Source: Perkinsela sp. CCAP 1560/9
Lineage: Eukaryota > Protista > Euglenozoa: Kinetoplastea
DNA: 64,000 nucleotides
Reading direction: 5' to 3'
Assembly: GCA_965644495.1 (NCBI GenBank)
Contig: CBFFSA010000007.1
Span: 124,001 to 188,000, forward strand
Shown here one piece after another: positions 1,566 through 56,089 of this stretch (position 1 is the stretch's first letter; each line of letters opens with the position of its first letter). The notes beneath the pieces were generated by a model. The model was not told the origin of the DNA and searched no databases. It saw nothing but the letters and a program-made list of their open reading frames with translations. The position numbers and the translations under genes are program-made.

Positions 1566-2594
1566 ATGTCGTTCTTAGCCAGGCCTAGCCAAAAAACAGC
1601 CTCTAGACTTTGGCTACTTAGCCAAGGAGGAAGAATGCACTGCACTTCCAGACACCACGGATCGAACGCTATACTCACAATGCGAAATATGAATCGGACG
1701 AACGTCCAGTTACGCAGCGCAATCCGTTCCTGGATGCCTTTCGCATCCTCTTCTATTTCTAACATGCCACATGTTCAACAACATGTCGGCTGCGTTCCGA
1801 GTCGCTTTGCGTCCAATTTTGTACTTACTTCCCTTCCTACGTTACAGCAAACGCTCCGAATGCATTCCACGTCCAACACAGAGAACCAGAAAGCTTCTTC
1901 TGCAGAGGACTCGAAGGCAAGTTCAGAGGAAAATGAAAAGAGTCAAAAGGAGTTTGAAAATATGCACTTCATACGACGCGAGTACCTTGGCTTGCGCCAG
2001 GACATTCGTGAGTACCCCGACATCTACAATGCGGTGAACGCGTTCCAGTTCATTCTGTTCACCGTATTTTGCCTCAGCAGTACGGGTTCCAAAGCTGAGG
2101 AGGAGTTCTGGATCCGCATGTGTGGGATCGACCTCCAGTGGGGCTCACTCCTTGCTCCCCTGCTCCATGTATTCCTCACGACCAACTTTCTCTCCATGGC
2201 ATTTGCTATGCTTCTGTTGCACAATCTTGGCCATACGGTGATCCAGGCGGTCGGGGCTCCGTTCCTACTGCGGTACCTCTCAGTTGTAGCGTTAGGCTCC
2301 GGAGCTCTCATGTGTGGCATGAAGATGTTCTTCCCGAATATTGGACAAGGTGAAGTACAATATGGTCCATGGGATATAATTGTTGGTCTCTTCGTCGTGA
2401 GTGCTGCCACAAGTGGGTACTCCCCGCTGCAGCTGCTGGGGTCGTTTAGCGGATGGGTGAAGTATGCGGCGTTTCTTGGCGCAGGAGTAATCATGTACTA
2501 TGACTGGCAGCCCTGTGTGTTTGGATTTCTTGTGGCCTATGGGCTGCATCGCAGTGGAATCAGTCGTATTCCATCTACAGTGGCAGCGTCATGA
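1566..2594 (+). CDS. mitochondrial rhomboid-like membrane protein, probably catalytically inactive (TimRhom-like)
   Basis: Arg/Ser-rich presequence-like N-terminus, then about 6 hydrophobic segments with rhomboid-like spacing (LLHVFL, LHNLGHTV, YLSVVALGSG); no GxSG or catalytic His. Confidence 0.6.
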   Translation: MSFLARPSQKTASRLWLLSQGGRMHCTSRHHGSNAILTMRNMNRTNVQLRSAIRSWMPFASSSISNMPHVQQHVGCVPSRFASNFVLTSLPTLQQTLRMHSTSNTENQKASSAEDSKASSEENEKSQKEFENMHFIRREYLGLRQDIREYPDIYNAVNAFQFILFTVFCLSSTGSKAEEEFWIRMCGIDLQWGSLLAPLLHVFLTTNFLSMAFAMLLLHNLGHTVIQAVGAPFLLRYLSVVALGSGALMCGMKMFFPNIGQGEVQYGPWDIIVGLFVVSAATSGYSPLQLLGSFSGWVKYAAFLGAGVIMYYDWQPCVFGFLVAYGLHRSGISRIPSTVAAS

Positions 2595-2884
2595 CAGTGG
2601 ACGAGAGTGCAATGTAGTCGTGTGAAGGAAGATGCTAGTTTCGGCATCGACTACTAGGGTACGATAGATTGTTGTTTTAGTTCCTGTGTGCTACAAATGG
2701 TATTATACGATTGAGCTACCTATCCGGCATCACATAAATAAGGTCAGCTTTTAACTAACAAACATACATGTAGGAAAAGAAAACAGTTTTAAGAGCCTCT
2801 CATAATACTTGTAAGAATGTTAAGCTTATTTCTCAACTTATTTAATCTAGACACGCATATTCTAGAATACATTAAGGAAAGTAA

Positions 2885-3568
2885 ATGCCAAAAAAGTTCG
2901 GCATCAATGATAAAAGTGCAGCGTCTAGAGATCGAAATAACCAACGTAAGGAACGCGTAGCGCAAGAAAAGGCACAGGCAATAGAGAATGCAAATTGGAA
3001 AGAAACAGACAAACATGAAATAAAAAAAGCCGAGCGAATCGCTCAACGTGAAGCCAAGGAACTAGAACGTCTAGCACGTGAGGCCGAAAAGTCCGCATTG
3101 CGCCGTGCCGAGGAGAATGCGTTATCATCTTCATCTGCCCCTAAAAAGGTCACGCATTTTGAACTCCAAAGAGACTTAGAACGTACGTCATCTCGTAATC
3201 GAATGGCTCATTCCTCGTCTCAAAATTTTATCTCACCGGACGAGCACGCGAGTACGCTAATGAGTCACTCCACGTGCGCCACCAATGCTACCATTGCAGA
3301 TGACGCACAAGTCATAGCGTCAGGCTTTGATACGGTTTCCGACGCTCTTTCTGGACTTAGTGCACAACCGGATCGACACCCCGAACGTAGGATGAAAGCT
3401 GCATTCCTACAATACCAGTCGACTCATTTACCTAAATTAAAGCGTGATATACCCGGACTACGTCTGTCGCAATATAAACAAATGCTATGGGATAAATGGC
3501 TGAAGAGTCCGGAAAATCCCATTGTCCGAGCACACTTGACTAGTTTGGTGCACCAGAACCCAAAGTAG
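2885..3568 (+). CDS. CCDC124: CCDC124/Lso2-family ribosome-associated coiled-coil protein
   Basis: MPKKFGINDK start; C-terminal DRHPERRMKAA...PGLRLSQYKQMLW..W.KSPENP. Confidence 0.9.
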   Translation: MPKKFGINDKSAASRDRNNQRKERVAQEKAQAIENANWKETDKHEIKKAERIAQREAKELERLAREAEKSALRRAEENALSSSSAPKKVTHFELQRDLERTSSRNRMAHSSSQNFISPDEHASTLMSHSTCATNATIADDAQVIASGFDTVSDALSGLSAQPDRHPERRMKAAFLQYQSTHLPKLKRDIPGLRLSQYKQMLWDKWLKSPENPIVRAHLTSLVHQNPK

Positions 3569-39485: not shown

Positions 39486-40331
39486 ATGGCTAGACCGAAG
39501 AAACCGAGAAACTCCTCTGAGACCGCCCAGCTAGCAGCAAGGCTTGAAAGCGATTCTTGTGAAAAATATTTCCAGGAAATCAACCTCTTGATACCTACTC
39601 CACATCGTCGTCGTATCGTTATCGGCAGTGTTGCGGAATGGTTGGGAGATGATGCAAAGACAACTGTCACCCACAACTGGGTGTGTTACGTGCGAGCTGG
39701 TACAGACGAGGACCCAACTCTTCAGTACATATCGTCGGTCCGTTTCCGAATGCACGAGTCTGTCCCTAACCCGATTCGTGTGATTGCCTCCCCTGGTCCT
39801 TATGAGGTCCAGGAACAGGCCTGGGGAGAATTCGAGATTCATATTGACATATTCTTTGTCGATGCAACAGTTCCTCCCTACGAGACGTGTCACATGCTAC
39901 GTCTTCGAAGTCCACCAACGCATGACCCTATATCTTTTTTTCCTTCCCCAGAATCGGGAGTGAAAACGACTACACCGGAAGATGTGGAAATTTATGATTC
40001 GGCGTTGAAGTATTCTCTAGATCCCGTTGTTTCTGAATTTCATGACGAATTGTTGTTCATTAAGCCTTCGGCAATTCTTCTTAAGGCTTTAAATAGTGAA
40101 AGACAGATGCAAAAGAGACAAACGGAGGATGTTAAATCGAATTTCCTGGCACTACAAGAGCGGGAGGCGTCATATGTCAAGTCCTTGTTGGACTCCGTAA
40201 ACGATGAGGTAATCATGCTTTTACAACAGTCTGAATCTACTTTCCAATCATTTGAGACACTTCGCGGAGAATTCGACAAAGGCTTGCAGGATTTGGAAGG
40301 GAGGCTGCAGTATCCGCAACTAAACACATGA
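39486..40331 (+). CDS. YEATS-domain protein (Yaf9/GAS41-like)
   Basis: THNWVCYVR, VRFRMHESVPNPIRV, PYEVQEQAWGEFEI; C-terminal coiled coil. Confidence 0.88.
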   Translation: MARPKKPRNSSETAQLAARLESDSCEKYFQEINLLIPTPHRRRIVIGSVAEWLGDDAKTTVTHNWVCYVRAGTDEDPTLQYISSVRFRMHESVPNPIRVIASPGPYEVQEQAWGEFEIHIDIFFVDATVPPYETCHMLRLRSPPTHDPISFFPSPESGVKTTTPEDVEIYDSALKYSLDPVVSEFHDELLFIKPSAILLKALNSERQMQKRQTEDVKSNFLALQEREASYVKSLLDSVNDEVIMLLQQSESTFQSFETLRGEFDKGLQDLEGRLQYPQLNT

Positions 40332-40636
40332 TCAACATTCCGAGCTGGTCTCCGCAAGATTCATTTAAGACCGTAATACAAACGCAACCATGTTTTCTTC
40401 AGTGGCATATTTCTAGAAAAATCGAAAATTGTTCTTTACCTAGTTCTTCGTGTGCCTTCACCCAAAGGGATTGGTAAGCTGCCCAGAAAGGAGAACCTAT
40501 ACTTGACAAACCCCATAAGAAATCGTGTTGTATTGTGTAATGTCTCTCTTCATTCATATATTTTCTGTTTGTATTGATTCTCTTGTTTTCTATCGAAATA
40601 TGGTCATTGATTTTGATACCGAAATATTACTAGATC

Positions 40637-41938
40637 ATGGAAAAATTACCAGGAACGTCATCGTGGCGCCCGATTTTTGATTGGTGTCGCAAAACATTGC
40701 GTTGCCACCCGCGGTACGAGATGAGAAATTCGATCGGATTGCCCAACACTCTGGTTGACCCTTTTCAACTGAATTCAGCCACCATTCGAGTCTTGCGAGA
40801 GACCAAATCTATGATACAAAGACTTGGAGGCTATTGCTTGCCATCTCCACTTTCAAAGACTTCCACAAACCGCTTTTCAGACCACGCGCAACATGCTCAG
40901 CTGCCGGTGAACTATACCACTATATGCTCCTGGAACTGCTTACAAGATTTGCAGTCATTTCGCAAAGCAGTTGGCATTGACCTGCCGGTCGATTACACTA
41001 CGGAGGAGCTTGCAGCCACACATGTGACAGATCTGCATGCTCAATGCGCAGCAAGTGGTCTTGCTCCGGGGGCTTTTATAGGGACTATGAATTCAATCCC
41101 TTACCAATATGGATCTCAGGGCACATGGGACGGTATATCGCATGTTTTACTGCCCGGAGTTTCCCGAGAAAGATTGGCTCGTTCAAAAATAGTATTTCTT
41201 GCTTGTGACGGTGTTCTTTTTTCCGAAAAAGCAAGAAATTTTATTAAACATATTTCTCATCAGCACACAGGCAAACTTAGACTTCCTTCGAAAATTTGTT
41301 CTCTTCCGCATCGATTGCTTGAACATTTAATATGTTCTCCAAGATATAGCAGCAAAAGCTTGCTGTTAAAAAACGTTTATTACAATCATGCACTTTACGA
41401 ATGGCAAAAATACGATCCTGACATACATTTTGTGATGATTGATCATCTGCAATGGTTTGATGCTGAATGCTTCCGGGACTTACTTTTGTACCCTCTTCGT
41501 GTTGTTGGCTCCGTTGGACATGGCGCTCGGCTTCGCGGAGTCCTGGCATGGCTAAAGCAAGTCATGGGTGCTCATCTCGGAATAGAAAATGTCAAGTTTA
41601 TTATTTTAGATGCCGTCGAAGCACCATACTTTAAGCATAGATTGTCCTCATTTAATGATAACAGAATTCGTGAACGGGAGGGTATTTGCCTTCCCCGACC
41701 CTTATTTACGGTTAAAGGGGGGTCTTTTTTGGTGAAAAACCTGGAGCCGGTGCAACGGCTTTTAGAAAATTCTCGGTATTCTACCTCCCTTGAAACGGTT
41801 TTGGAACAAAACGATATTCAGGAGAACTGTAAATCGTTTTGGAAAAGTACTAATTATGATTTGGAAGTGGAGCCAGACAAACCCCCGGAGCACTTCAGAA
41901 TCCTTACAAACCGTAAGACCCAGGCTAAAAATATGTAG
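40637..41938 (+). CDS. hypothetical protein, 433 aa
   Basis: Long ATG ORF on the coding strand after a pyrimidine-rich spacer; no family recognised. Confidence 0.7.
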   Translation: MEKLPGTSSWRPIFDWCRKTLRCHPRYEMRNSIGLPNTLVDPFQLNSATIRVLRETKSMIQRLGGYCLPSPLSKTSTNRFSDHAQHAQLPVNYTTICSWNCLQDLQSFRKAVGIDLPVDYTTEELAATHVTDLHAQCAASGLAPGAFIGTMNSIPYQYGSQGTWDGISHVLLPGVSRERLARSKIVFLACDGVLFSEKARNFIKHISHQHTGKLRLPSKICSLPHRLLEHLICSPRYSSKSLLLKNVYYNHALYEWQKYDPDIHFVMIDHLQWFDAECFRDLLLYPLRVVGSVGHGARLRGVLAWLKQVMGAHLGIENVKFIILDAVEAPYFKHRLSSFNDNRIREREGICLPRPLFTVKGGSFLVKNLEPVQRLLENSRYSTSLETVLEQNDIQENCKSFWKSTNYDLEVEPDKPPEHFRILTNRKTQAKNM

Positions 41939-42295
41939 CATGTTCTACGGGAAAGCAGAAACGGAATGACTGAAGGAATCATCCTTTGTTGCAACTGTAA
42001 ACTTTATTTTCTTAAATAGATGTGACATTATGTAGTATATAACTTGCCGTGTTATATTTTCCCATTTTTTGTGAAACAGATGAAGAGAATTCACTCAGAC
42101 TTTTTCTTTCGTCGCAAATACAATACATTCGTTGTATAATATAGCTTTTTATTTTTCACTTTCTTAGCTTGCCAATTCACATTCTTTTATGTTTTTTCCA
42201 GACGTGAAGTTTATCTCAACGTCACATTAGGTATAATTTCTTCAAGGGAGGTTTCATACTGTCATTACTAAATCAGTGTCCCACTTACCATATTA

Positions 42296-42938
42296 CTCCC
42301 CTCCCTATCCTAGCGTTGCCCCGGTACCCCCCCTCCTAGCGTTGCTTTTGAGGATAACTAATCCTGCCGCGAAGCGGCAGATTTTTTTTTTCGTTCTTTT
42401 TTTTCCGAGTTTTATATTCATGAAGACATTTTTTTATCGATTTTAATAATTTATCAATCCCATGCTATTACTGTCATTAGCCATTAGTCTCACTATATTA
42501 CCATCTTAGAATCGTCATCGACATGTCTAGAGATTCACTTGAAAATCGTGGCCCGATGAGCAAGTACATTATTCGAAATCTCCCATTGCCAAGAATCGGA
42601 GGCGTTGCAAGTGAGATTACTTCTACTACAATCCCAGCAACGGTACCCTTTTCCACTGAGGCGCTAGGATGCAAACCCTCAAAAATACTGACCATGCAAG
42701 AAAAACTCGTCGTTTGCAGATCTTCACTATCTACGAAGGAATTGAGCGAGAAATATGGCACTTCCACACAAAGCATTAGAAAAATAAAAGAAGTGGGTGA
42801 AAAGGAATATCAGGCGCGTGTCAACCGGGATGGCAAGAACCGAAAGCGAGATTATTGGGCCCCTGGTTTTTACCCCCCCCCCCCTCCTAGCGTTGCTTTT
42901 CACCAAAACCAGGCAACGCTAGGATAGGGGGGGGGGAG
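42296..42938. mobile_element. TA-TSD MITE, 643 bp, CTCCC termini, with HTH-like ORF remnant
   Basis: TA|ctcccctccctatcctagcgttgcc ... ggcaacgctaggataggggggggggag|TA; internal direct repeat cccctcctagcgttgctttt. Confidence 0.9.
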
Positions 42939-43183
42939 TACGAAGGTATAGGTACAGGGGTTTCAGTTGATCCCCTCACGGAAACAGGGGTTCTACAGGG
43001 ATTTTTTTACGAAGTGATCAACATTAGATTTATTCAATATTCACGTTATTAACTTTTTCATTTACCTTAGAATACTTTAACCACAGTATTCTTTTCCGCA
43101 TATTGTTTTTTCTTGCTGGAGCTCGCATCTTTTGATTTTATCGTTTCATCGCCTTCCTTTCACCGCCCAACTTCAAAACAAAA

Positions 43184-44824
43184 ATGCTCACCTGTGGAAT
43201 ATGTTTTGAAATTATGAAAGACCCTGTCGTGCTGCTCTGCGGCGACGCCTTTTGCGCAACGTGTCTGAGAGGTCACATGGAGCGTCACGCAGGCCCGGAG
43301 GGCGCGCTTTGCTTCATGTGTCACAAAGTCTCCCCCGGAGTTACCGTACAAACCGTCTCACGGTACCGTAGCCCTGAATTAGCCGCGCGTATCCGTGAGC
43401 TGCTGGGCACTGATTCTTCCGAGGCAGCAACGTGCGAGTGGTGCGAGGAGAAGCCCCCGACGCAGTACTGTGCCCTGTGTAACTACGCCCTGTGTGCGGA
43501 GTGCACTGTCGCGGTACATAAGAATAGTGCGAAGCGCAACCACAGCACGTTCTCCCTACAGGATGGACGGAAGCCTACAGGGTCCGCAGGGGGGTGTCAC
43601 AAATGTAACCAGAAAGGTCATGAGGAGTACCGCGCGGAATTCTTTTGTGTACAATGTCAAACCACTGTTTGTGTGTATTGCCTACAAGTGGGTCATCACC
43701 GAGGCCATGAGAATATCTCCGTAGCGGATGCCGCGGCGGATGTGCGTCAGCAGCTATCTCGTCAAGTTGAGGAAGTGATTCAAATCAAGAACTCAATTGA
43801 TGCCGCGGGTAAAGAGCTCAATCGTGTCACTTACCATTATGAAGATACGTATGATCATGTTGAACAAGCTCTAACAGAGCGCTTTGCGTACTACCAGCAA
43901 CAGTTGCTGCGAAAAGAATCTGAAGTGCGCGAGGTGTTACAGGGACTGCGTTCACAAGGAGACCGCGTTATCGCAGAATGTAGAAAAGAAACATTGCTAC
44001 AGATGGATAAATTGAATGAAACTATTGCGCGCGGAAGGCATTTTCAGAGTTCCGCAAGCGACACGGATGTGATTGAAAATCGTGTTGCGTTAAACACATT
44101 TCAAAACTTGGAAGCACCTTGCATCCAAGGTGGTGGCTTCCATTTTAAGGATCCTGGAGAGTTGAATCTTGGCGATGTAGGAGTCAGTCTTGACATATCT
44201 GAAATAGAAAGTGCTAACACAGTTCCGAAATCTTTAAGGGCCCCCGTATCCGCCAAATCAGTATCTTCCGACCCAATGCGCCGTGAAGCAGGTGCAGGAC
44301 GCACGCCAATATACACTGAGAAACCTTCGCATACGTCGGCTGCGTTGCCTAAAGCGAAACTTAGTTTTCCCGAGGATCGTGAAGTAAAAATACACAATTT
44401 ACCCGAAGGTCAACAGTTCGTTTGTTCCGAAACGTTATCGACACCCCAAATTGGAATGAGAGCGAAAGAATCTTTCATGGAAGGTGTGCACTCATGGAGT
44501 GTTCGTATTACCCGTGAGTTTAAAGGTGGAATTGGGCTGGTGTGCCTTGGGGGAACTTCTGAGGCTCAAACAGGGGAAGCATTAGTATGGCGCCCGGCAA
44601 AGCAGCTTGTGGAGGGTCGGTTGGGTGTCCCTACTGAATTAAGTCGCCGACATCCAATTCCTCGATCGGGTGATACATTGCACTTTACATTCGATAGTGA
44701 AAGGCGCGTGCTAAAAGTGGCTCATAACGATACCCCGCGTGGGGTGCTTGTGGAACATGTCCCCGGGTGGGTTGCTCCGTGTCTGATTTTTACGTCTGGA
44801 GATAGTGTCACTGTACTGAACTGA
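43184..44824 (+). CDS. TRIM-like E3 ligase: RING, two B-boxes, coiled coil, SPRY-like domain
   Basis: CGICF..PVVLLCGDAFCATC..CFMC; CEWCEE..CALC..LCAEC..H; CVQC..VCVYC..HRGH; GVHSWSVRI..IGLV..GDTLHFTFD..WVAPCL. Confidence 0.85.
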   Translation: MLTCGICFEIMKDPVVLLCGDAFCATCLRGHMERHAGPEGALCFMCHKVSPGVTVQTVSRYRSPELAARIRELLGTDSSEAATCEWCEEKPPTQYCALCNYALCAECTVAVHKNSAKRNHSTFSLQDGRKPTGSAGGCHKCNQKGHEEYRAEFFCVQCQTTVCVYCLQVGHHRGHENISVADAAADVRQQLSRQVEEVIQIKNSIDAAGKELNRVTYHYEDTYDHVEQALTERFAYYQQQLLRKESEVREVLQGLRSQGDRVIAECRKETLLQMDKLNETIARGRHFQSSASDTDVIENRVALNTFQNLEAPCIQGGGFHFKDPGELNLGDVGVSLDISEIESANTVPKSLRAPVSAKSVSSDPMRREAGAGRTPIYTEKPSHTSAALPKAKLSFPEDREVKIHNLPEGQQFVCSETLSTPQIGMRAKESFMEGVHSWSVRITREFKGGIGLVCLGGTSEAQTGEALVWRPAKQLVEGRLGVPTELSRRHPIPRSGDTLHFTFDSERRVLKVAHNDTPRGVLVEHVPGWVAPCLIFTSGDSVTVLN

Positions 44825-45160
44825 TAAGTACCGGGACGCAGGTCATAAAAGCCATAAAAGTGGGAGAACGAAAACAGGTGCAGTTAAATTGTGTGGTAAT
44901 TATGCATTTCAGTTCTGAATGTACATGCTACAGAGCATGAAGAGAATGAACTGGGGTACGAGCCCAAGCACTGGATAATAAGCAAACAACATGTATGCTC
45001 ATGTATGTAGTTGATCATTCGTAGTGATTCAAGGAAAAGAACGAATACTACCCTTATTGTCATGATTTCTTTGATCGCTGTAAAGATAAGAATTTTGTTC
45101 ATTGACTAAGAATATTGTGTATCAGTACATGTGTACGATTACCTTTTTTATACCTTTCTG

Positions 45161-48100
45161 ATGCATATAAAAACCATCGCTATAGCAGGTTTTAAGTCCT
45201 ATCGCGAGCAAATCTTTGAAACGCCCTTCAGCGCAAAACACAATGTTGTAGTAGGCAAGAATGGGAGTGGAAAATCGAATTTTTTCAATGCGATTCTCTT
45301 TGTTCTTTCAGAAAAATATTCTTCTTTGAGGCAAAGTGAAAGGAAAGACCTTTTGCATGCCACTGCAGGTTCTCCTTCACTAAGTGCGTATGTGGAAATC
45401 ACGTTCGACAATTCGGATGGCCGACTTGTCATTCCTGGCATGGCGGAGGAAAAAGAGATACGCATTCGACGAACTGTAGGTATACAAAAGGATGAATTTC
45501 GTGTAAATGATAAGGCAATATCGGCTCAAGATGTAAGACAACTCCTTGAAAGTGCTGGTTTTTCCTCTGCAAATCCCTACTACGTAGTAGAACAAGGTCG
45601 AATTGTTCGGCTAACCAATATGGGTGATACAGAGAGATTGGAACTTCTGAAAGAGGTGGCAGGAACCAAGGTATACGAAGATCGTCGCATTGAATCTATG
45701 CACATCCTTGAGGAAGCCAAAGAAAAGAGAGAAAAAATAGATGAAACTATCCTAAAAGTCGAATCGCGGCTAAAGGAGGTTGAATCCGAAAGAGATGAAT
45801 GGAGAACCTTTCAAGCGTTGGAGCAGAGGAGAAAAGCACTGGAGTATAGCTTATATGCCAAGGAAAGCAAAAAAGTGGACCTTGAGCTTGAGGATCTTGA
45901 AAACAGCAAACGCGACTTAACAACTTCCCATGATGCTCAATTAGAAAAAACTAAAGAGCTGCAGAAACAAATGCAGGAAGCAGAAAGAGAAGTTTCGAAA
46001 GCATCACGTGCGTTAACTGCCCTTGACGAAGAAAAACTGTCTCTTGAAACTGAGCGATTGAAGTTAGTTAAGCTCCTTGCTGAACTGCAATTGTCTTCAA
46101 AGCATGCAACAAACACGGTTTCTGCCTCAGATTCTGAACTCGCAACTTTGAAGCGAGAACTCAAAAGCACCGCAGTTTCTATCGAAAAAACTAAAAAGGA
46201 ACTTGATGCCAAGTCGAAGATACTGGAAAATCATATGTCACATACCGGAAAAGAAGAAGGCAGCTTAATTCAACGTGAATCCCGTTTATTTCAACTTCAA
46301 ACGAAGAGAGGACGACAAAGGCTATTCCATTCTAAGACAGAACGCGACAAATGGCTACATGACGAGATTCTCAAAACTGAAAAGTTACTTAAAGAGCATG
46401 AAAAAGAATTCAAATCGCTTCTGGAAGAAGAAAAACGACTAGAAACTGAATTAAGTGAGGAAATGGGTCTTGTTGAGAAACAGAAGACATCAATAGAAAA
46501 ACAAGAGACAATCGCATCGAAAACGGAAACATTGGCACTGGAAGCCATTAAAAGTCGAGATTCTTTTCACAACGAGCGAAGGATCCTTTTTCAAAAAATT
46601 CACGATGCGGAGAAGAAACTACGTGCGCAACGAGACGATCAAGAGAGAGCCCAGCATCTGCTGAATAAAACGTTTTCAAGTCACGAAATTCGTCAAGGCT
46701 TGGCTAGTATGCAGGAGTCCTTGAATGAAATTGGTGAGAAGAAGCTCAAGTCATCCGTTCACGGCTCCGTTATGGAGCTTTTTTTATGCGATCAGCGTTT
46801 CTATACTGCCGTTGAGACAACTGGGGGGAATGCTCTGCTGAGCGTCGTCGTTGATACATTCGAAGATGGTGCAAAAATTCTTGCGCACATGAACAAACAC
46901 AATAAACCTGGACGTGTCACGTTTCTTCCACTAGATACTTGCCGAGGAAAAAAGAAGGATCTGCCACACACAAGTGACGTGGTTCCTCTCATAGACCAAC
47001 TTCGATTCAAAGAAAAGCACCAGGTAATCTTTGCGGAGCTATTTGGTCGCACGGCGTTAGCTTCATCCTTGGATTCTGCTGCTACAGCCTCCAAGCAATA
47101 CAATTGTGACGCAGTGACTTTAGATGGAGACCAAGTCAATAGAAAAGGAGGTATCCAAGGAGGATATCGGGTCACGACGTCCAGGTTGCAAGCCCATGCA
47201 GACTTAATCAGCTTAAAAGCGGACTGTGAGCGCAGCACTTCCACTCTCCACGAACTTCGTCAGAGTTTAGCCACTCTTGAAAAGAAAATCGCGTCACAAC
47301 TACACGACTCAGAAGCCGCCTCAGAGAAAAGTGAGACTATGGTTGAAGAAATAAGAAATGCTCACCGTGAAAAACGTCGGGTGTATGAACATATTACCCG
47401 TAATCAACAACAACTACTCCGTACAAGAGAAGCAATTGGTACAACTAACAGTTCATTAGCAGACGTGAAGGGGAAAGTTATTACCTTTCGAGCTGAGTTA
47501 AAGGAAGATTTTCAATCCCGCATGGGTGATGACGACGAGAAGGAGCTTGACCAACTCATGAGTCAAGTTAGTGAACAAAAGAAGCAAGTGTCCAATGAAA
47601 AGCAAAAAACTGCTACACTTTCAACAGAGGTACAAGTGTTAGAAGATACGTTAAATTCTTTGCGCAAACAATTGGATTCGGTACAGGACCGAAGTACGTG
47701 TTTACAGCATACCTCAGAGCGAACCAAGAATCATCGGATCAACTCAGAGCTCGGTTCCGTCGAAGTGGAGGTACGTGATATTACAAACCGAATTGTCAAT
47801 GTTGAGAATGAAATCGCAGATCTTACTAAAAGGAAACAGGAAAATGAAAAGATATTTCAAGAAAAAAATTCCAACGAATTACAATACACTCGCGAAATGC
47901 AATCCGGAGGCGAAGATTTCGATAAATATATTACCAAGAAGGCTTTACTAGGCCAACAATTTGATGAGCTGAAGTTCAAGTTGGAACGAGTAGGTGTCAT
48001 TCCGAGCAACCTATCAGAGTATGATGCAATGAGCGAAACAACTATTAGAACCGAGCTTAAGAAGTGTTCCGAAAAGTTACGATCCTTTACCCACGTTAAT

Positions 48101-48769
48101 CGCAAAGCATTGGAGCAGTATACTCAATTGGAAGAAAATTTTAACGAGCTAGTAGAAAAACGAGCTGTTACTGAAAGAGAGCTTACTTCAATCCGAGAAA
48201 TGATGCTTAAACTTGATGCACAGAAGGACGAGACTATTGAGCGAACGGTGAAGCAAGTGCAGTTTCAGTTTGAGAAGGTCTTTTTGGAACTTGTAACAGC
48301 AAAAGGAGCATCAGCTGAATTACAACTGTTGCGATCAAAGGAATCACCAGGTAAAACTGGTGTGGAAGGATACTCTGGTATTCGCATTCGTATAAGCTTT
48401 GGACTCGGCACACCGGTGTCAGAATTAGCGCAACTTTCCGGAGGACAAAAGTCTCTCGTTGCTTTGTCTCTTATATTCGCGATTCAGAGGTGTGATCCGG
48501 CTCCGTTCTATTTATTCGATGAAATTGATGCTGCCTTGGACGAGGCATACCGTAGCAGCGTCGCGCAAATGATCAAGCGGCAATGCGAGGGCGCTCAATT
48601 CATTACGGCTACATTCAAACAGGAGATGCTTGACGTGGCTGATAAGGTTTATGGCATCGTTTTTCGCAATCGCGTGAGCAGAATCCAAGAAATTACTCAC
48701 GAAGAGGGGTCGGCGCTTTTACGCAAGGCAGCGCAGGAACGGCAGGACAGCACTAAAGAGAAGACGTAA
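45161..48769 (+). CDS. SMC3: cohesin subunit SMC3
   Basis: GFKSY, VVGKNGSGKSNFF, hinge, LSGGQKSLVALSLIFAIQRCDPAPFYLFDEIDAALD. Confidence 0.98.
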   Translation: MHIKTIAIAGFKSYREQIFETPFSAKHNVVVGKNGSGKSNFFNAILFVLSEKYSSLRQSERKDLLHATAGSPSLSAYVEITFDNSDGRLVIPGMAEEKEIRIRRTVGIQKDEFRVNDKAISAQDVRQLLESAGFSSANPYYVVEQGRIVRLTNMGDTERLELLKEVAGTKVYEDRRIESMHILEEAKEKREKIDETILKVESRLKEVESERDEWRTFQALEQRRKALEYSLYAKESKKVDLELEDLENSKRDLTTSHDAQLEKTKELQKQMQEAEREVSKASRALTALDEEKLSLETERLKLVKLLAELQLSSKHATNTVSASDSELATLKRELKSTAVSIEKTKKELDAKSKILENHMSHTGKEEGSLIQRESRLFQLQTKRGRQRLFHSKTERDKWLHDEILKTEKLLKEHEKEFKSLLEEEKRLETELSEEMGLVEKQKTSIEKQETIASKTETLALEAIKSRDSFHNERRILFQKIHDAEKKLRAQRDDQERAQHLLNKTFSSHEIRQGLASMQESLNEIGEKKLKSSVHGSVMELFLCDQRFYTAVETTGGNALLSVVVDTFEDGAKILAHMNKHNKPGRVTFLPLDTCRGKKKDLPHTSDVVPLIDQLRFKEKHQVIFAELFGRTALASSLDSAATASKQYNCDAVTLDGDQVNRKGGIQGGYRVTTSRLQAHADLISLKADCERSTSTLHELRQSLATLEKKIASQLHDSEAASEKSETMVEEIRNAHREKRRVYEHITRNQQQLLRTREAIGTTNSSLADVKGKVITFRAELKEDFQSRMGDDDEKELDQLMSQVSEQKKQVSNEKQKTATLSTEVQVLEDTLNSLRKQLDSVQDRSTCLQHTSERTKNHRINSELGSVEVEVRDITNRIVNVENEIADLTKRKQENEKIFQEKNSNELQYTREMQSGGEDFDKYITKKALLGQQFDELKFKLERVGVIPSNLSEYDAMSETTIRTELKKCSEKLRSFTHVNRKALEQYTQLEENFNELVEKRAVTERELTSIREMMLKLDAQKDETIERTVKQVQFQFEKVFLELVTAKGASAELQLLRSKESPGKTGVEGYSGIRIRISFGLGTPVSELAQLSGGQKSLVALSLIFAIQRCDPAPFYLFDEIDAALDEAYRSSVAQMIKRQCEGAQFITATFKQEMLDVADKVYGIVFRNRVSRIQEITHEEGSALLRKAAQERQDSTKEKT

Positions 48770-49323
48770 AGACCGCTTCTTCAATTGCGCGAATAGCAAA
48801 TTTTGGACTTTTAGTCGAGCAAAATTTATAGTCAGGATTTACTATTATTATCTTTTCAGACATCAATATTGCTTTGTACCTTTGTACGATTCGTACGATA
48901 TCGTACCCTTGTACGATTCGTGTGTCGTTATTAAATATAGTGATAACATGCGCTGTATATGTATGTGTTGGGATGGGTTGCCTGCATACGCGTTCACGTT
49001 ATGTATAAAGTGCACATACATTTCTAAGACCTTTTGCTTTGCAATATAGGCTTCACGAATTCAAAATCAATGAACTTTAGATAATTCAATAGACAACAAT
49101 GTTATCTCATTTTCCAATGGCTTTATGTCAATCACTGCAAATGTTTTAGTAGTATCATTGGGTCAATTGGGATACCACAGAGTTCCGGCACAGTAAACAT
49201 CTTCATTTGTTTTGTTTAACCATTTGACATAATTGATTGTGTGCTTCTATGATTTGAGCACTATGCAGTGTTTTTCTCATTGTAATTTTACTTTCCTACA
49301 GTATTGGGCTACCATTTTTGAAC

Positions 49324-51639
49324 ATGTGCTGCGCAAAAAGAACCACCTCCGTTACTGTAGTGGAGTATCTGTTATTTGTTATCGCCTGCGTAATTTGCAC
49401 TAATACCAAGCTTTATCCCGCTGCATACATTGACTCCCTAGATGTAGAATCCTTTGTACCCGATGACGGTAGCGACTTTCACGCTGGCACAGTGAACAAA
49501 CGAAGCAGGCACCAGTCTAAGGTAAAGCTTATTGGTATTCACCTTAATGCTTCGGCACCTGATGATACAATTCAGACACCGGCAACATTGAGTACGGAGT
49601 TGAATCAAGTATTTGAAAACGCAATTCGCCTTCTTTTTGCGAATACATCAACCTCAACATCTGTCCGGCTATGCGCATCAGCACATTGTGAGGAGCAAAG
49701 AATCGAAATCGGTGGCACAGACTCCGTCATAAATGCTGCGCCACATGCAAGTATTCCCCCCCTTCGCGCGGACCAAGTGATTAACGCAATCGACCTTCTC
49801 CAAAAATGTGCAGATCAAGGCCACTCCACTGCCCAATTTCTCCTGGGAGTGGCCCACAGCTTTGGAATCGCCACTCCTCTTTCCCCAGCAAAAGCCGTAA
49901 CCTACCACACCTTCTCCGCTCGCGACCACAACACCCTTGGGGCCCTAGCCATGGCTCTTCGTCACGACATTGGGCTCCACGTACCGCCAAGTTGCGTGTC
50001 CAGTCACCGGGAGTACCACCGGGTGGCTCGTTCCCTTATCCACGGCCGCCCCTACCCCACCCCCCGGGCGGTCGTCCGGCAGCAGCGTCTCGGTCACCAC
50101 CTCGAGGGCTACGCCACAAGTCTTCTGGGGCTCGACGGCACCGAGCTCCTCCCCTCCGCGACCGATGCCGACTTCCTGGCCTACCATCACCAGGCGGCGA
50201 AAAACGGGGAGGAGAAATCCATGATGAGTCTGGGCCTGATTTATGTGTTTGGGCTGCACGGGGCCGCGCAGAATGGGGAGCGCGCGGTGACCTACTTTGC
50301 GCAGGCCGCCCAGGAGGACTACACACCGGCGTATGGTGCGCTGGGTCAGGTTTATCTCTATGGCGTGGAGTCCGTATGTGGGGCTGTCGCACGAAATGCG
50401 ACGCTCGCGAAACAGTATTTCGTGCTGGGCGCGGAGGAAAAGGACCCCATGTCGCTCGCAGGGTTGGGATATTTAGAGCTTCATCCGGAGTTGTTTGGTG
50501 AAAGGCCAGAGGTGTCACCAAATTTGAAAAATCATAGTTACGCTCGTCGAATGTTTTCAAAGGCGGCTGACCTTGGTAGCGCTGAGGCGATGTACAATCT
50601 TGCAATAATGCATTTGGAAGGGGCAGGGGGTTCCACACCACGACCTGAAAGGGCGATGGAATTGCTCTTACGAGCAACACAAAGAAAACACGCACCAGCA
50701 ATGTATAAATTGGCGCAATTGTCGGGTGCAAAGCCCGACCTTAGCCCTGGAGAATGTATCTTCTCGCGCGAATTGTTTAAGACGGTAGCCTCCCAACATG
50801 ATGTGCTTGAAATGATGGAAGATGCTCATCAAGCATTTCTATGTGGTGATCACACTAGAGCCCTGTTGAGGTATCTTATCTTATCCGAATTAGGATACGA
50901 TGTGGCCCATATGAATGCGGCGTACATTCTAGAGGATAGGATCAGTAATGCGGACTTGGGGATTCTTTTTAGTACACCCTTGCCCAGGGTTGAGCCTCTC
51001 GCTGGAGTAATAGAGAGGGATTCACATAATTCGAACGCTAAACAGCAGCAGCAAACGAACTATAGGCATACACTTTTACACATTCTTCTCCAAAGATCCG
51101 CAAAACAAGGAAATACCGCAGCTATTCTACGTCTTGGTGATTTGTACTTTCGTGGCGAAGGTTGCGAAACTAATTATAGAATCGCTGAAAATTTCTACGA
51201 GGAAGCTTCCCGCCATCATAATGCCGAGGCTGCGTACAATCTCGGGTACATGCATCACTATGGCATCGGCACTACTCGAGATGCACACTTGGCTAAGAGA
51301 TATTATAATTTGGCTGCGAATTATGATCCTGCCATGAAGTTTCCAATGTATTCAGTGGTAGCGTGGCTACACGTTGAAGAATGGTGGAAGCATCCGTGGG
51401 CAGGTTTTCCATCACTAGATGAGCCTGCACACCTTCAGAACGTGTCTACAGTTTTTAATGCAGAATCAAACTTGTTATCTGATGAGGACAAACGCATCAA
51501 GAGTAAGGATTTGTTCTCACAGTATTATGACACACTGATGAATTGTTTTGCCGTAGAGAACCTCGAAATTCTGGAAACAGCAACCCTTTATTTTCTGATC
51601 ACAACACTTATGTTTTTGCTGTATGTAAAGTCAAGATAG
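49324..51639 (+). CDS. SEL1L: SEL1L/Hrd3-like ERAD component
   Basis: Signal-like N-terminus, many Sel1 repeats, AYNLGYMHHYGIG..RDAHLAKRYY, hydrophobic C-terminus. Confidence 0.88.
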   Translation: MCCAKRTTSVTVVEYLLFVIACVICTNTKLYPAAYIDSLDVESFVPDDGSDFHAGTVNKRSRHQSKVKLIGIHLNASAPDDTIQTPATLSTELNQVFENAIRLLFANTSTSTSVRLCASAHCEEQRIEIGGTDSVINAAPHASIPPLRADQVINAIDLLQKCADQGHSTAQFLLGVAHSFGIATPLSPAKAVTYHTFSARDHNTLGALAMALRHDIGLHVPPSCVSSHREYHRVARSLIHGRPYPTPRAVVRQQRLGHHLEGYATSLLGLDGTELLPSATDADFLAYHHQAAKNGEEKSMMSLGLIYVFGLHGAAQNGERAVTYFAQAAQEDYTPAYGALGQVYLYGVESVCGAVARNATLAKQYFVLGAEEKDPMSLAGLGYLELHPELFGERPEVSPNLKNHSYARRMFSKAADLGSAEAMYNLAIMHLEGAGGSTPRPERAMELLLRATQRKHAPAMYKLAQLSGAKPDLSPGECIFSRELFKTVASQHDVLEMMEDAHQAFLCGDHTRALLRYLILSELGYDVAHMNAAYILEDRISNADLGILFSTPLPRVEPLAGVIERDSHNSNAKQQQQTNYRHTLLHILLQRSAKQGNTAAILRLGDLYFRGEGCETNYRIAENFYEEASRHHNAEAAYNLGYMHHYGIGTTRDAHLAKRYYNLAANYDPAMKFPMYSVVAWLHVEEWWKHPWAGFPSLDEPAHLQNVSTVFNAESNLLSDEDKRIKSKDLFSQYYDTLMNCFAVENLEILETATLYFLITTLMFLLYVKSR

Positions 51640-52000
51640 CGATCTACCTATGAGGTACGATTAGGTCCTAATCGTCGAATTTTTATCACTTCGAAAATGA
51701 CGTTCTTGTAGCTTTTATCGCATCCCCCCTATATCGTTATGATAACGATATAGTACGTTAGAGAGAAGTTATCCTTAACAAATGAAACGTGTTTGTTTTG
51801 AAAGCTTTGCTACTTTCCTTTGTATAAATGGTATAGTACATTTTAACGAATATTTCAAATGATTTTGATTTGAAAACGTTCAGGAATTCATCCTTTCTTG
51901 CCTTTCTTTAATACCTTAACCACATACACTTACATTAGTAAACGAAATTTAGAGACTTACTACAAAGATAAAGTCTTTTTGATCAAATCGTCTATTAAAA

Positions 52001-54079
52001 ATGAGTGTCCCACTTCTACACAACCCATTTCGAGACCAAAACGCACCGAACAGCGCGATCACATCCGATTCTTCATCGATATCGGAGAGATTTAATTCAG
52101 ACAATGTAAAAGAATCTCAAAGGCCGTGGAATACCGAGAGCAGGTCTTCGTTTCATCACCATTTAAAGAACATTTCCCCTGACCTATACCAAAAATTGAA
52201 TCCTGGTTCTCATGTTCAAGATACGAACTTTAGAGCTCCTGAAAAGAACCAGATATCCGCCAGTAAGGATGAAAACGTTACACAGAAAGCTGACTCTGCT
52301 CCAGATAGTTCCTCTGATGGATCGCAAGCAGTTCCACTTTTTCACCGCTTTGCAACGGGAATTGGCACGAATTTGGGAGAATCTCTGGGTATTTCCCATA
52401 CTACACTACTACAAAAAAAGTTACAAAACTTCTTTGACGCTTTTACGCCTTCCAATGCCCCAGAATCAAAACTTAGGAAAGATGAGTGTCCTGTTCCTGG
52501 ATTTACGCCACCGATCCCTTTGTCTGCATCCGAGCAGAGAAAAGAGATGCTTCGCCTCTATAAGGTAGTAAATACTAAAGCTGCCCAACAAGCTATGCGC
52601 AAGTCGGAAGTTGAGTTAGAGTATCATCAAGCGTGCGCATCTCAAGCGGAATTGCGTCAAATTCTTCATGACCTACAAAAAGATCATGATACCATGGACG
52701 CTGATTTAGTAAAATGGGAACAGCAAGCTAATCGATGTTCTGCATTGTCACAGGAACAAGAAAAGCTGAAGCAAACTTTCCGAGATTTGGAGTTACAAAG
52801 AAAAGAGTTTGATGCATCGTTTGCTTCTCGAACCAAGCAGTGCGAAACGGAACTTGAAAGTCTACGATCAATATTGACAATGTTAAGCGCCCAGGTGTCT
52901 GAAAAGGATGTAGACCTCGAAGCCCTCAGGACTGATGTCGGCGTCGCAGAGGAAGGAAGCGTGCGCTTGTCATCGTTGGATACGGCTACTGAGACCATGG
53001 AGAAGGAGCTTCAATCTTTACAAATTGATGTTGATATCATTAAACAACGTTACACACATGAATTAGAGGCTTCAGAAAGCGAAAATGAAAGCTTTCGTTC
53101 GCTTACGCAAGAATTGGAACAAGAAGTTTCGAGATCCCGCAAGATGAGGGCTGGTGTTGAACATCTCATACAAAAAGTGGATTCTGTCCCGGAAACGACG
53201 ATTTCAAATTTGAACAACTATGTAGCGTTTTCAAAACAAGCATTCGCGGAAGCGAATACTATAATTTCGGACTGTAAAGACGCAATTCAATCGGTTTCTA
53301 AGGAGACAAGTGCTGTTCATGAACTAATGTTTCCTGCGGATGTTGCAATAGAAAAGTTCGCCGAGAAATTGAAAGTAAGAGACCAGTCTCACTCCAGATT
53401 TCTAGGAAAAATCCAAGCACCCGTAAATCCAAACATCAGGAAAAATCAACAATTGATTACCACTGAACATATTGCGTCACATTCTGCTTCACCGGACTTA
53501 GCAACGGATACTTCAATGCATCTTTCTCTAGATCCCGATAGTGAAAGAAAGGCTCTGTTCGGTGAGCTTTCCCAAGAACTGGGCAATTCTTCTGTTTTTC
53601 AGTCAGTTGTTCTTTATGAGGCCGAAGAAAACACTTTGCGCGGTGAAACTGAAGGGAGGAAAATTAACGAGCAGAACACAACCTCTACGTCGCATTTGTT
53701 GTTAAAGAATGGAACGGGGGAGATGCACCTTGATGATAATACTGCTCCAAATGAATATGTTACGAATATAATGGAAACTTCAACCTTTTTTGAGCTTCCT
53801 TCCACAACTCCGTCCGATGTGCTGCCTTCATTTCCACCAGGATTGAATTTACCTTTCAATGACTCGTTACCCTCGCAGGTATCCGAATATTGCGCTGGAA
53901 AGACGATGTCTCAAGTGAAAAACGTAACACAAGCTTCTAGCAGCGAAGCAGAATTTGACCCGGATCGTACCATTTTATTCGTGGAAGACGATCATCCACA
54001 AAATAAGAACTCTCGTGATGAGAATAGTACGAGCGAGTTTCCCATGTCGAACAAACGTTGGAAATTTGACTACAAATAA
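52001..54079 (+). CDS. coiled-coil protein with disordered ends, unknown
   Basis: 692-aa ORF with central heptad-rich region. Confidence 0.75.
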   Translation: MSVPLLHNPFRDQNAPNSAITSDSSSISERFNSDNVKESQRPWNTESRSSFHHHLKNISPDLYQKLNPGSHVQDTNFRAPEKNQISASKDENVTQKADSAPDSSSDGSQAVPLFHRFATGIGTNLGESLGISHTTLLQKKLQNFFDAFTPSNAPESKLRKDECPVPGFTPPIPLSASEQRKEMLRLYKVVNTKAAQQAMRKSEVELEYHQACASQAELRQILHDLQKDHDTMDADLVKWEQQANRCSALSQEQEKLKQTFRDLELQRKEFDASFASRTKQCETELESLRSILTMLSAQVSEKDVDLEALRTDVGVAEEGSVRLSSLDTATETMEKELQSLQIDVDIIKQRYTHELEASESENESFRSLTQELEQEVSRSRKMRAGVEHLIQKVDSVPETTISNLNNYVAFSKQAFAEANTIISDCKDAIQSVSKETSAVHELMFPADVAIEKFAEKLKVRDQSHSRFLGKIQAPVNPNIRKNQQLITTEHIASHSASPDLATDTSMHLSLDPDSERKALFGELSQELGNSSVFQSVVLYEAEENTLRGETEGRKINEQNTTSTSHLLLKNGTGEMHLDDNTAPNEYVTNIMETSTFFELPSTTPSDVLPSFPPGLNLPFNDSLPSQVSEYCAGKTMSQVKNVTQASSSEAEFDPDRTILFVEDDHPQNKNSRDENSTSEFPMSNKRWKFDYK

Positions 54080-54856
54080 AAAGGCCGCATGTACATGTGC
54101 TGTGACCTGTTGCTACGCCTTAGTGCCGCCAAAAAAGTGGAAAACTATTCTTTCAATAAGTTACTTACTGTGCCCCGAATGAAGCCTTAGGTAGAGCTAG
54201 AATAAGTGAAGAGTTCTGGACGAACGTCGAAGAAAGTGTTTTTCTAGTTTTTGAATAGTTCAGATCAGTAAGTACAACTCATGCTTTTTTCTGTGCTGCC
54301 CACTAGTGATGCATTTCTTTTTGTCATTATTTTCTGAAAGTAACCTTAATATCATCAAAAGTATATTTTCGTTTCTTTTAATGAACAAAGTAAAGAAATT
54401 GTTTCCTTTTTTTCATTCAAAGATTCTCTTGATTCAAACCATGTAGATTTTCATATTCTCTTTATTCGAACGTTAGTCGTATCCTCAATTTTTGGCACCG
54501 AGCGCGTATGGACTGACCAGGAACTTGTATTTTAGAAAAATTTCATAAATATCTTACTGTATAGAGAACTACTATAACTTCGACTTCATACTTTGTGAAT
54601 ATCATAGGACACTGTAAATGAGAGTCCTAGAATGCGTACGGTTAGAAATCAGAAAAGAATTTTATTTTTGCATTTACTTCTTATAACAAACTCTGTTCTT
54701 CATCGATGCATCACATTTCCGAGATTTCACACACTTTTTTCTTTTCTCTCCACAAAAAAGAACATCTCATTTCATCACTACCACCCCTTCTACCACCCCA
54801 TCACTACCACCCCATCACTTCCACCCCTTCTCCATGACCCTCTAATCCCCACTACC

Positions 54857-56089
54857 ATGTCAACCCCTCTATGGTGGGAACTCCGCCGTTGGTTCTCCCT
54901 GCCCCCCTCCCCCCTCCGGGCCCGTCGCGCCGGAGCCCACCCCCGCATGTGGCGCCCCGACCACCTCCTCCGCAACCTCCCCAGCTCCCTCACCGGGGAC
55001 GAAGTCAAGGCCGTGGCCTACCGCCCCCTCCCCCCGGCCCACACCGTGGAGGCCGAGGAGGACTTCCACACCAACTGTGTCCTCCACCGGGAGTACTACC
55101 CCCCCGAGTCCCGCACCCACTTCGGCACCGAGCTCGCCCCCGTGGCCTACTCCCCCACCGAGCGCGCGAGCCTCATGACCCGACTGGCGGACCAGAAACA
55201 GGCCGAGGAGCGGTCCGCCCACCGCACCCACGACACCAGCGCCCAGGTCGGGAAGCAAATCCGTTTCGCCCCCGGGGAGGATGACGGGCAGCACGGCCCC
55301 GTCTCCGGGGTCGCGTACGAGATGGATGACCGCCGTCGGGGGTTCCTGGAGGCCCTCGCGGGGGTCCTCCCGGGCCGGGAGGCGTTGCAGGAGGCGTGTG
55401 GGCTGATCTACGGGTGTGACTCCTATGAGGGGAAACAAGGCTGGTTGGCCATGTTTTTTGGTACCCATGATGATGGGCTGGAGCAACTCTCGGAGAAGAT
55501 TGCGAATTTGCAGGAGGATGCGAGGGATCTGGCAAAGGATGAAGCGATGCAAATGAATGAGGCGGAGGCGAGGGAGGGTCCGATTCCGAATGAGTATGTG
55601 GAGTATACTCCGGTGTATAAGTCGTACTTGCAGTACTGCCGTGGGGAGACGCGTACACCTTACTGTGAAAGTGATCTAGGAGACACAGGTCTGCTATCGC
55701 TGTACCAAGAACGACTGCGTTGGAGGAAAATATTTGACAAACTTACGGGAAATTTGCACATGGAATCTAGCACGGCATTTGATGAGATCCAAGGCGGGTG
55801 CAAATACTCCAGCAAGTCGACTGCTAAAAAAGTTGCTGTACATTCCTGCGCTCACCTGAAGAATCTTAACCTTACGGAGCAAGAAAAGATTGATGTGGAG
55901 CGTTTGGACCACCAGCTACGTACACTACGACTTTTCGATGCAAAGAAAGTCGAAATTCAACGTGAACTCGTGACCAGAGTAAATCTTGGGGTTGGAGGAA
56001 GTGTTACCCCAGATTATACACTTGGCAGTCCGCATACGACACCGGGAAATCCTCAGGATCCATTAAACCCTTTGGGAGGAAATATGTGA
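54857..56089 (+). CDS. hypothetical protein, possibly mitochondrial
   Basis: Likely start MSTPLWWELRRWF (Arg-rich); ORF track extends to 54632. Confidence 0.7.
   Translation: MSTPLWWELRRWFSLPPSPLRARRAGAHPRMWRPDHLLRNLPSSLTGDEVKAVAYRPLPPAHTVEAEEDFHTNCVLHREYYPPESRTHFGTELAPVAYSPTERASLMTRLADQKQAEERSAHRTHDTSAQVGKQIRFAPGEDDGQHGPVSGVAYEMDDRRRGFLEALAGVLPGREALQEACGLIYGCDSYEGKQGWLAMFFGTHDDGLEQLSEKIANLQEDARDLAKDEAMQMNEAEAREGPIPNEYVEYTPVYKSYLQYCRGETRTPYCESDLGDTGLLSLYQERLRWRKIFDKLTGNLHMESSTAFDEIQGGCKYSSKSTAKKVAVHSCAHLKNLNLTEQEKIDVERLDHQLRTLRLFDAKKVEIQRELVTRVNLGVGGSVTPDYTLGSPHTTPGNPQDPLNPLGGNM

What the first reader, a model, noticed from the sequence alone, without database searches (positions are those of the whole stretch)
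1980..55650. Recurring GC-rich islands with a C/A-to-G/T strand-skew flip, inside unrelated genes: candidate replication origins
Seen: in an otherwise AT-leaning cluster, 0.6-0.9 kb GC-rich islands recur with the same polarity. The + strand is C(A)-rich on the left and G(T)-rich on the right, with flips near 24.0, 30.45, 50.2 and 55.3 kb and weaker ones near 2.3 and 43.4 kb. The bias sits at synonymous third positions and in UTR, so protein need does not explain it. All genes are on +, so gene orientation does not explain it either. Established: leading strands tend to be G/T-rich, so a negative-to-positive skew switch marks bidirectional origins. Divergent R-loop or initiation sites give the same polarity. 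Inference: these are fixed-position, sequence-imprinted origins or initiation elements every ~5-20 kb, unlike the sparse origins mapped at cluster boundaries in trypanosomatids.
Basis: partly seen in the sequence, partly recalled or inferred. Interest (0 to 1): 0.85.

Follow-up and report, generated by a model that had tools for sequence, protein, structure and literature searches.

The report
C-to-G mirror islands inside Perkinsela genes
In a kinetoplastid that lives inside an amoeba, hundreds of roughly 1-kb spots inside ordinary genes have drifted to C-rich on one side and G-rich on the other, strongly enough to shift the proteins' amino acids; they most likely mark fixed DNA-replication start sites, but no experiment has shown this.

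Summary
The islands are real. The genome is a Perkinsela (amoeba endosymbiont). Four flips (24.08, 30.43, 50.19, 55.27 kb) pass a within-gene permutation test; the weak ones (2.3, 43.4 kb) do not on their own. At four-fold sites C rises from 0.20 to 0.51 left of the centre and G from 0.20 to 0.51 right of it. A and T fall together, so the claimed A-to-T flip is absent. The skew vanishes beyond about 1 kb. Genome-wide, C-then-G patterns outnumber G-then-C 2678 to 376. Three other Perkinsela lineages show the same polarity, mostly at other positions. Symmetric GC-biased gene conversion is rejected; strand-specific A/T-to-G gain fits. There is no centre motif. Best reading: mutational footprints of fixed two-way replication origins (0.42), with the polarity of the Leishmania major origin/centromere sites. 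Rivals are recombination-break hotspots with strand-biased repair (0.25) and two-way transcription initiation or R-loops (0.15). The pattern is its own reverse complement, so a both-strand check cannot discriminate. New here: a second haplotype shows no excess polymorphism in islands and only a weak link to homozygous-tract edges. The scan noted these islands on other DNA of this genome.

The parts
23681..24788 (.). Island 1; C-to-G flip at about 24076, 379 nt into an unnamed 405-aa gene (23697-24914 +)
   Evidence: four-fold C:G 37:21 left, 18:28 right; permutation p 0.009
30013..31357 (.). Island 2; flip at about 30426, 407 nt into the Nup98-96 gene (30019-34035 +); the left edge of the homozygous tract lies here
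   Evidence: C:G 52:21 left, 25:45 right; p 0.001
49741..50504 (.). Island 3; flip at about 50192, 868 nt into a Sel1-repeat gene (49324-51639 +)
   Evidence: C:G 41:16 left, 15:32 right; p 0.001
54809..55633 (.). Island 4, strongest in the window (GC3 up to 0.97); flip at about 55274 in a gene whose only homologs found are Perkinsela-type (ORF 54632-56089 +; true start probably near 54849)
   Evidence: C:G 64:13 left, 16:34 right; p 0.001
2035..2541 (.). Weak island, flip at about 2310 in an unnamed gene (1566-2594 +); not significant alone
   Evidence: p 0.11
43231..43685 (.). Weak island, flip at about 43375 in a RING/B-box gene (43184-44824 +); not significant alone
   Evidence: p 0.18
30269..56863 (.). 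Tract with no substitution against the second haplotype assembly (one 7-nt insertion near 54902), between tracts at about 0.5-1% divergence
   Evidence: run contigs agree over 49700-55690 except one A/G at 55486
35756..39037 (+). DNA polymerase delta gene: control. No island here, but a long one in its orthologs in two other Perkinsela lineages

Best explanation
The islands are long-term mutational footprints of fixed, two-way replication origins inside genes. Shown: each strand gains G, at the cost of A and T alike and not of C, over about 0.5-0.8 kb on the 3' side of a centre. The two arms are equally strong, the effect needs no G neighbours, and it spills into codon positions 1-2. Inferred: the G-gaining strand is the one laid down outward from the centre (the leading strand, whose parental copy is the exposed lagging template). 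Some origin-proximal step, such as error-prone or poorly corrected synthesis around the polymerase switch, or damage bypass on the unwound strand, raises A-to-G and T-to-G about five-fold. The resulting G4-prone arms may then help keep the origin in place. Sites persist long enough to approach equilibrium and move between lineages.
For: Arm symmetry: outgoing strand G 0.35 top-right and 0.37 bottom-left, C unchanged at 0.20. A one-parameter A/T-to-G mutation model (factor about 5) is 270-290 AIC units better than symmetric gBGC and 14-56 better than selection for G alone. G or C gain persists without like neighbours (log odds ratio 1.1-1.25). No shared 6-8-mer at centres and little specific folding (mean z -0.9). 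G3 G4 motifs in 9 of 26 outgoing arms, 0 incoming, 0 in background. Same polarity and G4 layout as L. major origin sites, even inside unidirectional clusters (PMC7511235). Human origins carry a local initiation-linked mutational footprint that reproduces GC rise, skews and G4 in simulation (PMC9645720). Same polarity in three other Perkinsela lineages with shifted positions; vertebrate origins also turn over fast (title of PMC6547456). MCM family present.
Against: No replication data exist here. No replicon-wide skew between islands (errors of 0.03-0.05 would hide a small one). No T skew, unlike L. major. T. brucei SNS-seq origins have the opposite G4 polarity and are intergenic. The size of the shift (up to 100% GC at four-fold sites over more than 1 kb in L002) exceeds any origin footprint I know of. 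A two-parameter selection model fits as well as or better than the mutation model. SNP density in island coding DNA (13/2403) equals background (139/27891).
Confidence: 0.42

Rival explanations
1. Stable double-strand-break (recombination) hotspots with strand-biased mismatch repair. In heteroduplex on either side of the break, G wins G:T and G:A mismatches while other mismatches are restored, which drives A/T to G on the newly made strand only.
For: Arm length of 0.5-0.8 kb suits resection and conversion tracts (own knowledge). Near-total loss of A/T at strong sites is typical of a fixation bias. SPO11 and MutS homologs are present. One homozygous-tract edge lies 158 bp from the 30426 flip and three others 1.6-1.9 kb from a flip. 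In the right arm C/T at two-fold sites stays at background (0.38 v 0.41) while T falls at four-fold sites.
Against: Symmetric gBGC is rejected and the A/T-to-G drive model fits worse than the mutation model in all three zones tried. Tract-edge association is not significant (P 0.06-0.14, six edges). Human hotspot flanks lose C and A from single-stranded DNA (PMC7615360), which by my inference gives the opposite polarity at resected ends. The strand-biased repair rule is ad hoc.
Confidence: 0.25
2. Internal two-way RNA polymerase II initiation or pausing sites. R-loops on both sides leave, or select for, a G-rich non-template strand, as at CpG-island promoters or trypanosome GT-rich start regions.
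For: All 14 centres lie within 900 nt of the first ATG (binomial p 0.0007; within-gene p 0.03). G/T-rich coding-strand elements drive T. brucei transcription (PMC5579346). Polarity is what divergent transcription predicts.
Against: T. brucei start regions are 4:1 sense-biased and T-rich, whereas these arms are equal and have no T gain. Initiation inside essential single-copy coding sequences (RPS6, proteasome alpha, eIF4E) would truncate them. T. brucei R-loops do not follow positive GC skew (PMC6294496). An apparent divergent switch in relative L001 (4043-4921) has no island (a single case). Divergent switches of this genome were not in my sample.
Confidence: 0.15
3. Selection on DNA or RNA structure (paired G4 arms, nucleosome placement, or a 5' mRNA hairpin) for a function other than replication, possibly tied to base J.
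For: The two-parameter selection model ties or wins. Enrichment is somewhat stronger in runs (log odds ratio 1.7-2.1). JBP1- and JBP2-like genes are present. Three of 13 islands fold better than gradient-matched shuffles (z below -2.3).
Against: Gain is largely context-free, shifts amino-acid use and breaks up a FolD domain with C-run and G-run expansions. Positions are not kept between lineages. A hairpin would form equally with G-then-C order.
Confidence: 0.1
4. Artefact or protein-driven composition (low-complexity domains, codon bias of highly expressed genes, assembly error).
For: Nup98 repeats and one acidic gene are low-complexity; tubulin has gene-wide GC3 of 0.62.
Against: Holds at four-fold sites within single codon families, with low-complexity genes removed, in independent assemblies and genome-wide. 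The same amino acid takes C-ending codons on the left and G-ending on the right.
Confidence: 0.02

Closest known systems
Leishmania major AcH3/base J/KKT1 origin-centromere sites (PMC7511235)
   Same: Kinetoplastid; highly local negative-to-positive G skew; G4 on the reverse strand upstream and the forward strand downstream; seen even within unidirectional clusters.
   Different: One per chromosome, between transcription units, with T skew. Here hundreds, inside coding sequence, about 1 kb, with a GC peak and no T skew.
Vertebrate constitutive origins with local skew inversion and initiation mutagenesis (PMC6547456, PMC9645720)
   Same: Local GC rise, skew inversion, G4 motifs, proposed mutational cause, turnover between species.
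   Different: [quoted passage not shown]
Trypanosoma brucei stranded SNS-seq origins (PMC13179062)
   Same: Kinetoplastid origins flanked by strand-specific G4.
   Different: [quoted passage not shown]
gBGC recombination hotspots; human meiotic break mutagenesis (PMC7615360)
   Same: About 1-kb GC peaks (own knowledge) and mirror-image strand asymmetry around a centre.
   Different: gBGC favours G and C equally on both strands, which is rejected here; the human asymmetry is loss of C and A from single-stranded DNA.
T. brucei GT-rich dispersed promoters (PMC5579346)
   Same: G-rich strand pointing away from the start.
   Different: G and T homopolymers, directional, at cluster starts; not symmetric islands in coding sequence.

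Membership tests
Replication origin (eukaryotic) | Nascent-strand initiation or ORC/MCM loading at the site | not testable with these tools
   No SNS, BrdU, Okazaki or ChIP data for this organism
Replication origin (eukaryotic) | Replicon-wide leading/lagging skew between sites | tested here: not met
   Four-fold GC skew within about 0.1 of zero beyond 1.2 kb; a very small skew is not excluded
L. major origin-centromere sites | Local negative-to-positive G skew with G4 reverse-left, forward-right | tested here: met
L. major origin-centromere sites | T skew flips as well | tested here: not met
   p 0.12, trend opposite
L. major origin-centromere sites | One per chromosome, outside genes | tested here: not met
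   At least 11 strong loci in C1 1-480 kb; all centres examined are in coding sequence
L. major origin-centromere sites | Base J, AcH3 and KKT1 marks | not testable with these tools
   Only the JBP genes were shown present
T. brucei SNS-seq origins | Intergenic, poly(dA)/poly(dT) flanks, plus-strand G4 upstream | tested here: not met
gBGC hotspot | Strand-symmetric weak-to-strong gain | tested here: not met
   Right-arm two-fold C/(C+T) 0.38 v 0.41 background; AIC about 280-300 worse than the best model
Recombination hotspot | Excess of exchange points at the site | tested here: inconclusive
   Four of six tract edges within 2 kb, P 0.06; mean log distance P 0.14
Recombination hotspot | SPO11 breaks at the site | not testable with these tools
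   SPO11 domain present; no break map
Trypanosome GT-rich transcription start region | Directional G- and T-rich coding-strand elements | tested here: not met
   Arms equal, no T gain
Trypanosome GT-rich transcription start region | Located at cluster starts / divergent switches | not tested

The most novel reading that the evidence does not exclude
Perkinsela has hundreds of fixed intragenic sites where an undescribed two-way DNA process (origin firing with a G-inserting synthesis or repair step, or a strand-biased conversion) converts A and T to G on the outward strand so strongly that it rewrites codons and proteins. Its origin or break map could then be read from sequence alone and followed across lineages.
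Probability: 0.5. Interest if true: 0.85.

Novelty: new variant of a known kind. Interest (0 to 1): 0.7.

Why it matters
How kinetoplastids choose origins is disputed: one strong site per chromosome versus thousands of weak ones. If these islands are origins, an early-branching kinetoplastid offers several hundred sequence-readable candidates and a direct test. Whatever the cause, it is an unusually strong, local, strand-specific A/T-to-G bias that overrides codon usage and shifts amino acids (Pro 0.077 left, Gly and Val about 0.09 right, against 0.045-0.06), which matters for mutation-spectrum work and for phylogenies built on Perkinsela proteins. I found no paper describing it in Perkinsela (open-access library only).

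Tried and rejected
Centre motif: top 6-8-mers no better than gradient-matched shuffles. Specific hairpin: mean z -0.9. Homopolymer pattern C7..G7 was swamped by transposon repeats and gave the reverse ratio (169 v 263), so I used a period-3 pattern. The second assembly (ERZ24900291) was fetched only over stretches I already held, to compare haplotypes. Homolog searches for the 23697 and 49324 proteins returned only this organism; the JGI scan found nothing. No run is on record as RNA, and contigs show no starts or strands. Two hotspot papers were not held. Hypermutation: island SNP density not raised. Lineage-specific amino-acid changes in the 54632 gene lean to C on the left (11 to C, 4 from C) but are too few and are similar outside the island. 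G-rich-only patches in C1 (418.2, 434.3 kb) share a repeated sequence and were set aside. CpG is not enriched (o/e 0.93), so these are not CpG islands.
Full report
Organism. The window is G000:C7:124001-188000 of a 21-Mb, 110-contig assembly. Genes are intronless and co-directional. The only homologs found for the 54632 protein are a Perkinsela sp. CCAP 1560/4 cluster and two ENA assemblies. The RPS6 protein of this genome is identical to one in a Paramoeba atlantica transcriptome. I infer a Perkinsela endosymbiont of P. atlantica. Perkinsela has polycistronic, intron-free genes and meiotic genes (PMC5601477).

Data held. The 64-kb window and C1:300001-500000. Beyond that I used only count-type searches of the genome, loci of three related lineages, and a second assembly over stretches already held.

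Observation. Four GC peaks with a C-to-G flip lie at 24076, 30426, 50192 and 55274. Permuting four-fold third positions within each gene and re-picking the centre gives p 0.009, 0.001, 0.001, 0.001; the flips at 2310 and 43375 give 0.11 and 0.18. Among 99 genes, 16 reach GC3 >= 0.72 against 0.03 expected; two are tubulins with gene-wide bias and one is an acidic low-complexity gene. Pooled, four-fold C is 0.51 left of centre and G 0.51 right, against 0.20 each in background. The outer arms (300-600 bp), outside the window used to pick centres, keep the skew: C149:G58 left, G209:C102 right. A and T fall together and do not flip. Skew is gone beyond about 1 kb. Genome-wide, a period-3 C-then-G pattern matches 2678 times against 376 for its reverse. 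About 11 strong loci lie in the first 480 kb of C1; scaling from the local count suggests several hundred islands, a rough figure.

Anatomy. Read outward from the centre, each strand has A 0.22, C 0.20, G 0.36, T 0.21, and the two arms are alike. So only G rises, on the strand running away from the centre. This pattern is its own reverse complement. Its presence in both + and - clusters is therefore automatic and does not separate origins from gene-relative causes. All 14 centres are in coding sequence, 95-868 nt from the first ATG, an offset too variable for a fixed splice-linked distance. Host genes are unrelated: Nup98-96, Sel1, RING/B-box, mitochondrial carrier, eIF4E, proteasome alpha, RPS6, an RTC-family gene, FolD. 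Codon positions 1-2 shift too, even with low-complexity genes removed: Pro 0.077 left, Gly 0.095 and Val 0.092 right, Lys and Asn roughly halved. In the FolD domain at C1:360.1-360.6 kb in-frame C-run and G-run expansions interrupt the protein. There is no centre motif and little specific folding. G3 G4 motifs occur in 9 of 26 outgoing arms, none incoming, none in background.

What force. Gain of the favoured base persists without like neighbours (log odds ratio 1.1-1.25, against 1.7-2.1 within runs), so selection for G-runs is not needed. Equilibrium models fitted to four-fold and two-fold sites reject symmetric gBGC by about 280-300 AIC units. The best one-parameter model raises A-to-G and T-to-G mutation about five-fold on the outward strand. 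A two-parameter selection model ties or wins by up to 15 units. These fits assume equilibrium, independent sites and equal islands, so mutation and selection are not separated.

Relatives. Two lineages (L001, L002) have longer, stronger domains of the same polarity. In L002 the polymerase delta gene climbs from 35% to 100% four-fold GC with C excess, then flips to G near codon 880; the G000 ortholog has no island. The 54632 gene has an island in G000, L001 and L002 but not in the CCAP 1560/4-like L003, which has a weaker one in another gene. The process is shared across the Perkinsela lineages sampled, and sites turn over. The comparison rests on about 21 kb per lineage.

Second haplotype. Against assembly ERZ24900291 the window has no substitution at 1-3914 and 30269-56863 and about 0.5-1% elsewhere; C1 436-498 kb alternates likewise. 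Contigs of three runs show one difference in 6 kb of the identical tract, so it is most likely true homozygosity and not a phase switch. One edge lies 158 bp from the 30426 flip and three lie 1.6-1.9 kb from a flip, but over six edges this is not significant (P 0.06-0.14). SNP density in island coding DNA equals background (0.54% v 0.50%). The single run difference, 55486 A/G, is a synonymous A/G site in a right arm; one site proves nothing.

Mechanism. Origins, breaks and two-way transcription all give mirror symmetry. For origins: the polarity and G4 layout match L. major origin-centromere sites (PMC7511235), and human origins carry a local footprint able to build GC, skew and G4 (PMC9645720). 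Against: no T skew, no replicon-wide skew, and opposite polarity at T. brucei SNS origins (PMC13179062). From memory, the leading strand is C/A-rich in budding yeasts, so G-rich leading strands are not a eukaryotic rule. For breaks: arm length, near-complete loss of A/T, SPO11 and MutS genes and the one close tract edge. Against: ordinary gBGC fails, and single-strand damage at human hotspots removes C and A (PMC7615360), which I infer gives the opposite polarity. For transcription: the 5' bias. Against: equal arms, no T gain, position inside essential reading frames. I put origins at 0.42, break hotspots at 0.25, transcription/R-loops at 0.15, structural selection at 0.10. Every step from composition to function is inferred.

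Novelty. Skew inversions at origins are known, including in a kinetoplastid. Hundreds of intragenic, G-only, protein-shifting islands are not described in the papers I could search. It fails the membership tests for L. major and T. brucei origin types and for gBGC hotspots, while working most like the first. Earlier notes of this scan report the same islands elsewhere in this genome; I read them after my tests, and they are not independent support.

Noticed in passing
window 1-3914, 30269-56863; C1 435999-444984, 470169-487073, 488051-497891: Two assemblies of this Perkinsela alternate between identical tracts and tracts 0.5-1% divergent, about half and half: a loss-of-heterozygosity mosaic suggesting mitotic conversion or inbreeding in a diploid endosymbiont.
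   Followed up: partly
L027:3027-5291 (inserted at window 5339-5340): Haplotype-specific 2.27-kb element with 25-nt perfect terminal inverted repeats and a TA target duplication; the same end occurs near C1:418.8 kb. It points to a recently active DNA transposon, whereas published Perkinsela Merlin copies lack TIRs (PMC8101967). Its two ORFs have no Pfam match.
   Followed up: partly
window 5392-6375: The inositol polyphosphate kinase allele of the other haplotype has a premature stop (5698) and many missense changes, right behind that insertion; probably a decaying allele.
   Followed up: no
window 11300-17200 and 58300-64000; L024:1-453; L027:12823-13923: Gene-poor patches with short tandem and inverted repeats, a DDE_3 transposase fragment (58867-59625, minus strand), and Merlin/IS1595 and DDE_1 ORFs in the other haplotype.
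   Followed up: no
L010:76-570 (C1:360076-360570): Strongest island seen; it is a FolD NAD(P)-binding domain fused in frame to an upstream repeat ORF and interrupted by C-run and G-run expansions.
   Followed up: partly
window 6548-7882 and 9999-11327: Two beta-tubulin copies separated by an unrelated gene, with gene-wide GC3 0.62 and G-rich 3' flanks; alpha-tubulin-like matches lie on other contigs.
   Followed up: no
window 17266, 20757, 24914: Other haplotype has a stop early in the RPB11-like ORF (a later start is called), a one-base insertion in the 18037 gene and a lost stop that extends the 23697 protein by 43 aa; real alleles or assembly errors.
   Followed up: no
C1:466031-466333 and 487074-488050 (L020, L022): Short hyper-divergent patches between haplotypes: about 23 SNPs in 300 bp, and 18 SNPs in 1 kb inside an otherwise identical tract.
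   Followed up: no
C1:418143-418660 and 434200-434390 (L015, L017): One-sided G-rich tails that follow a shared repeated sequence; a different class from the islands.
   Followed up: no
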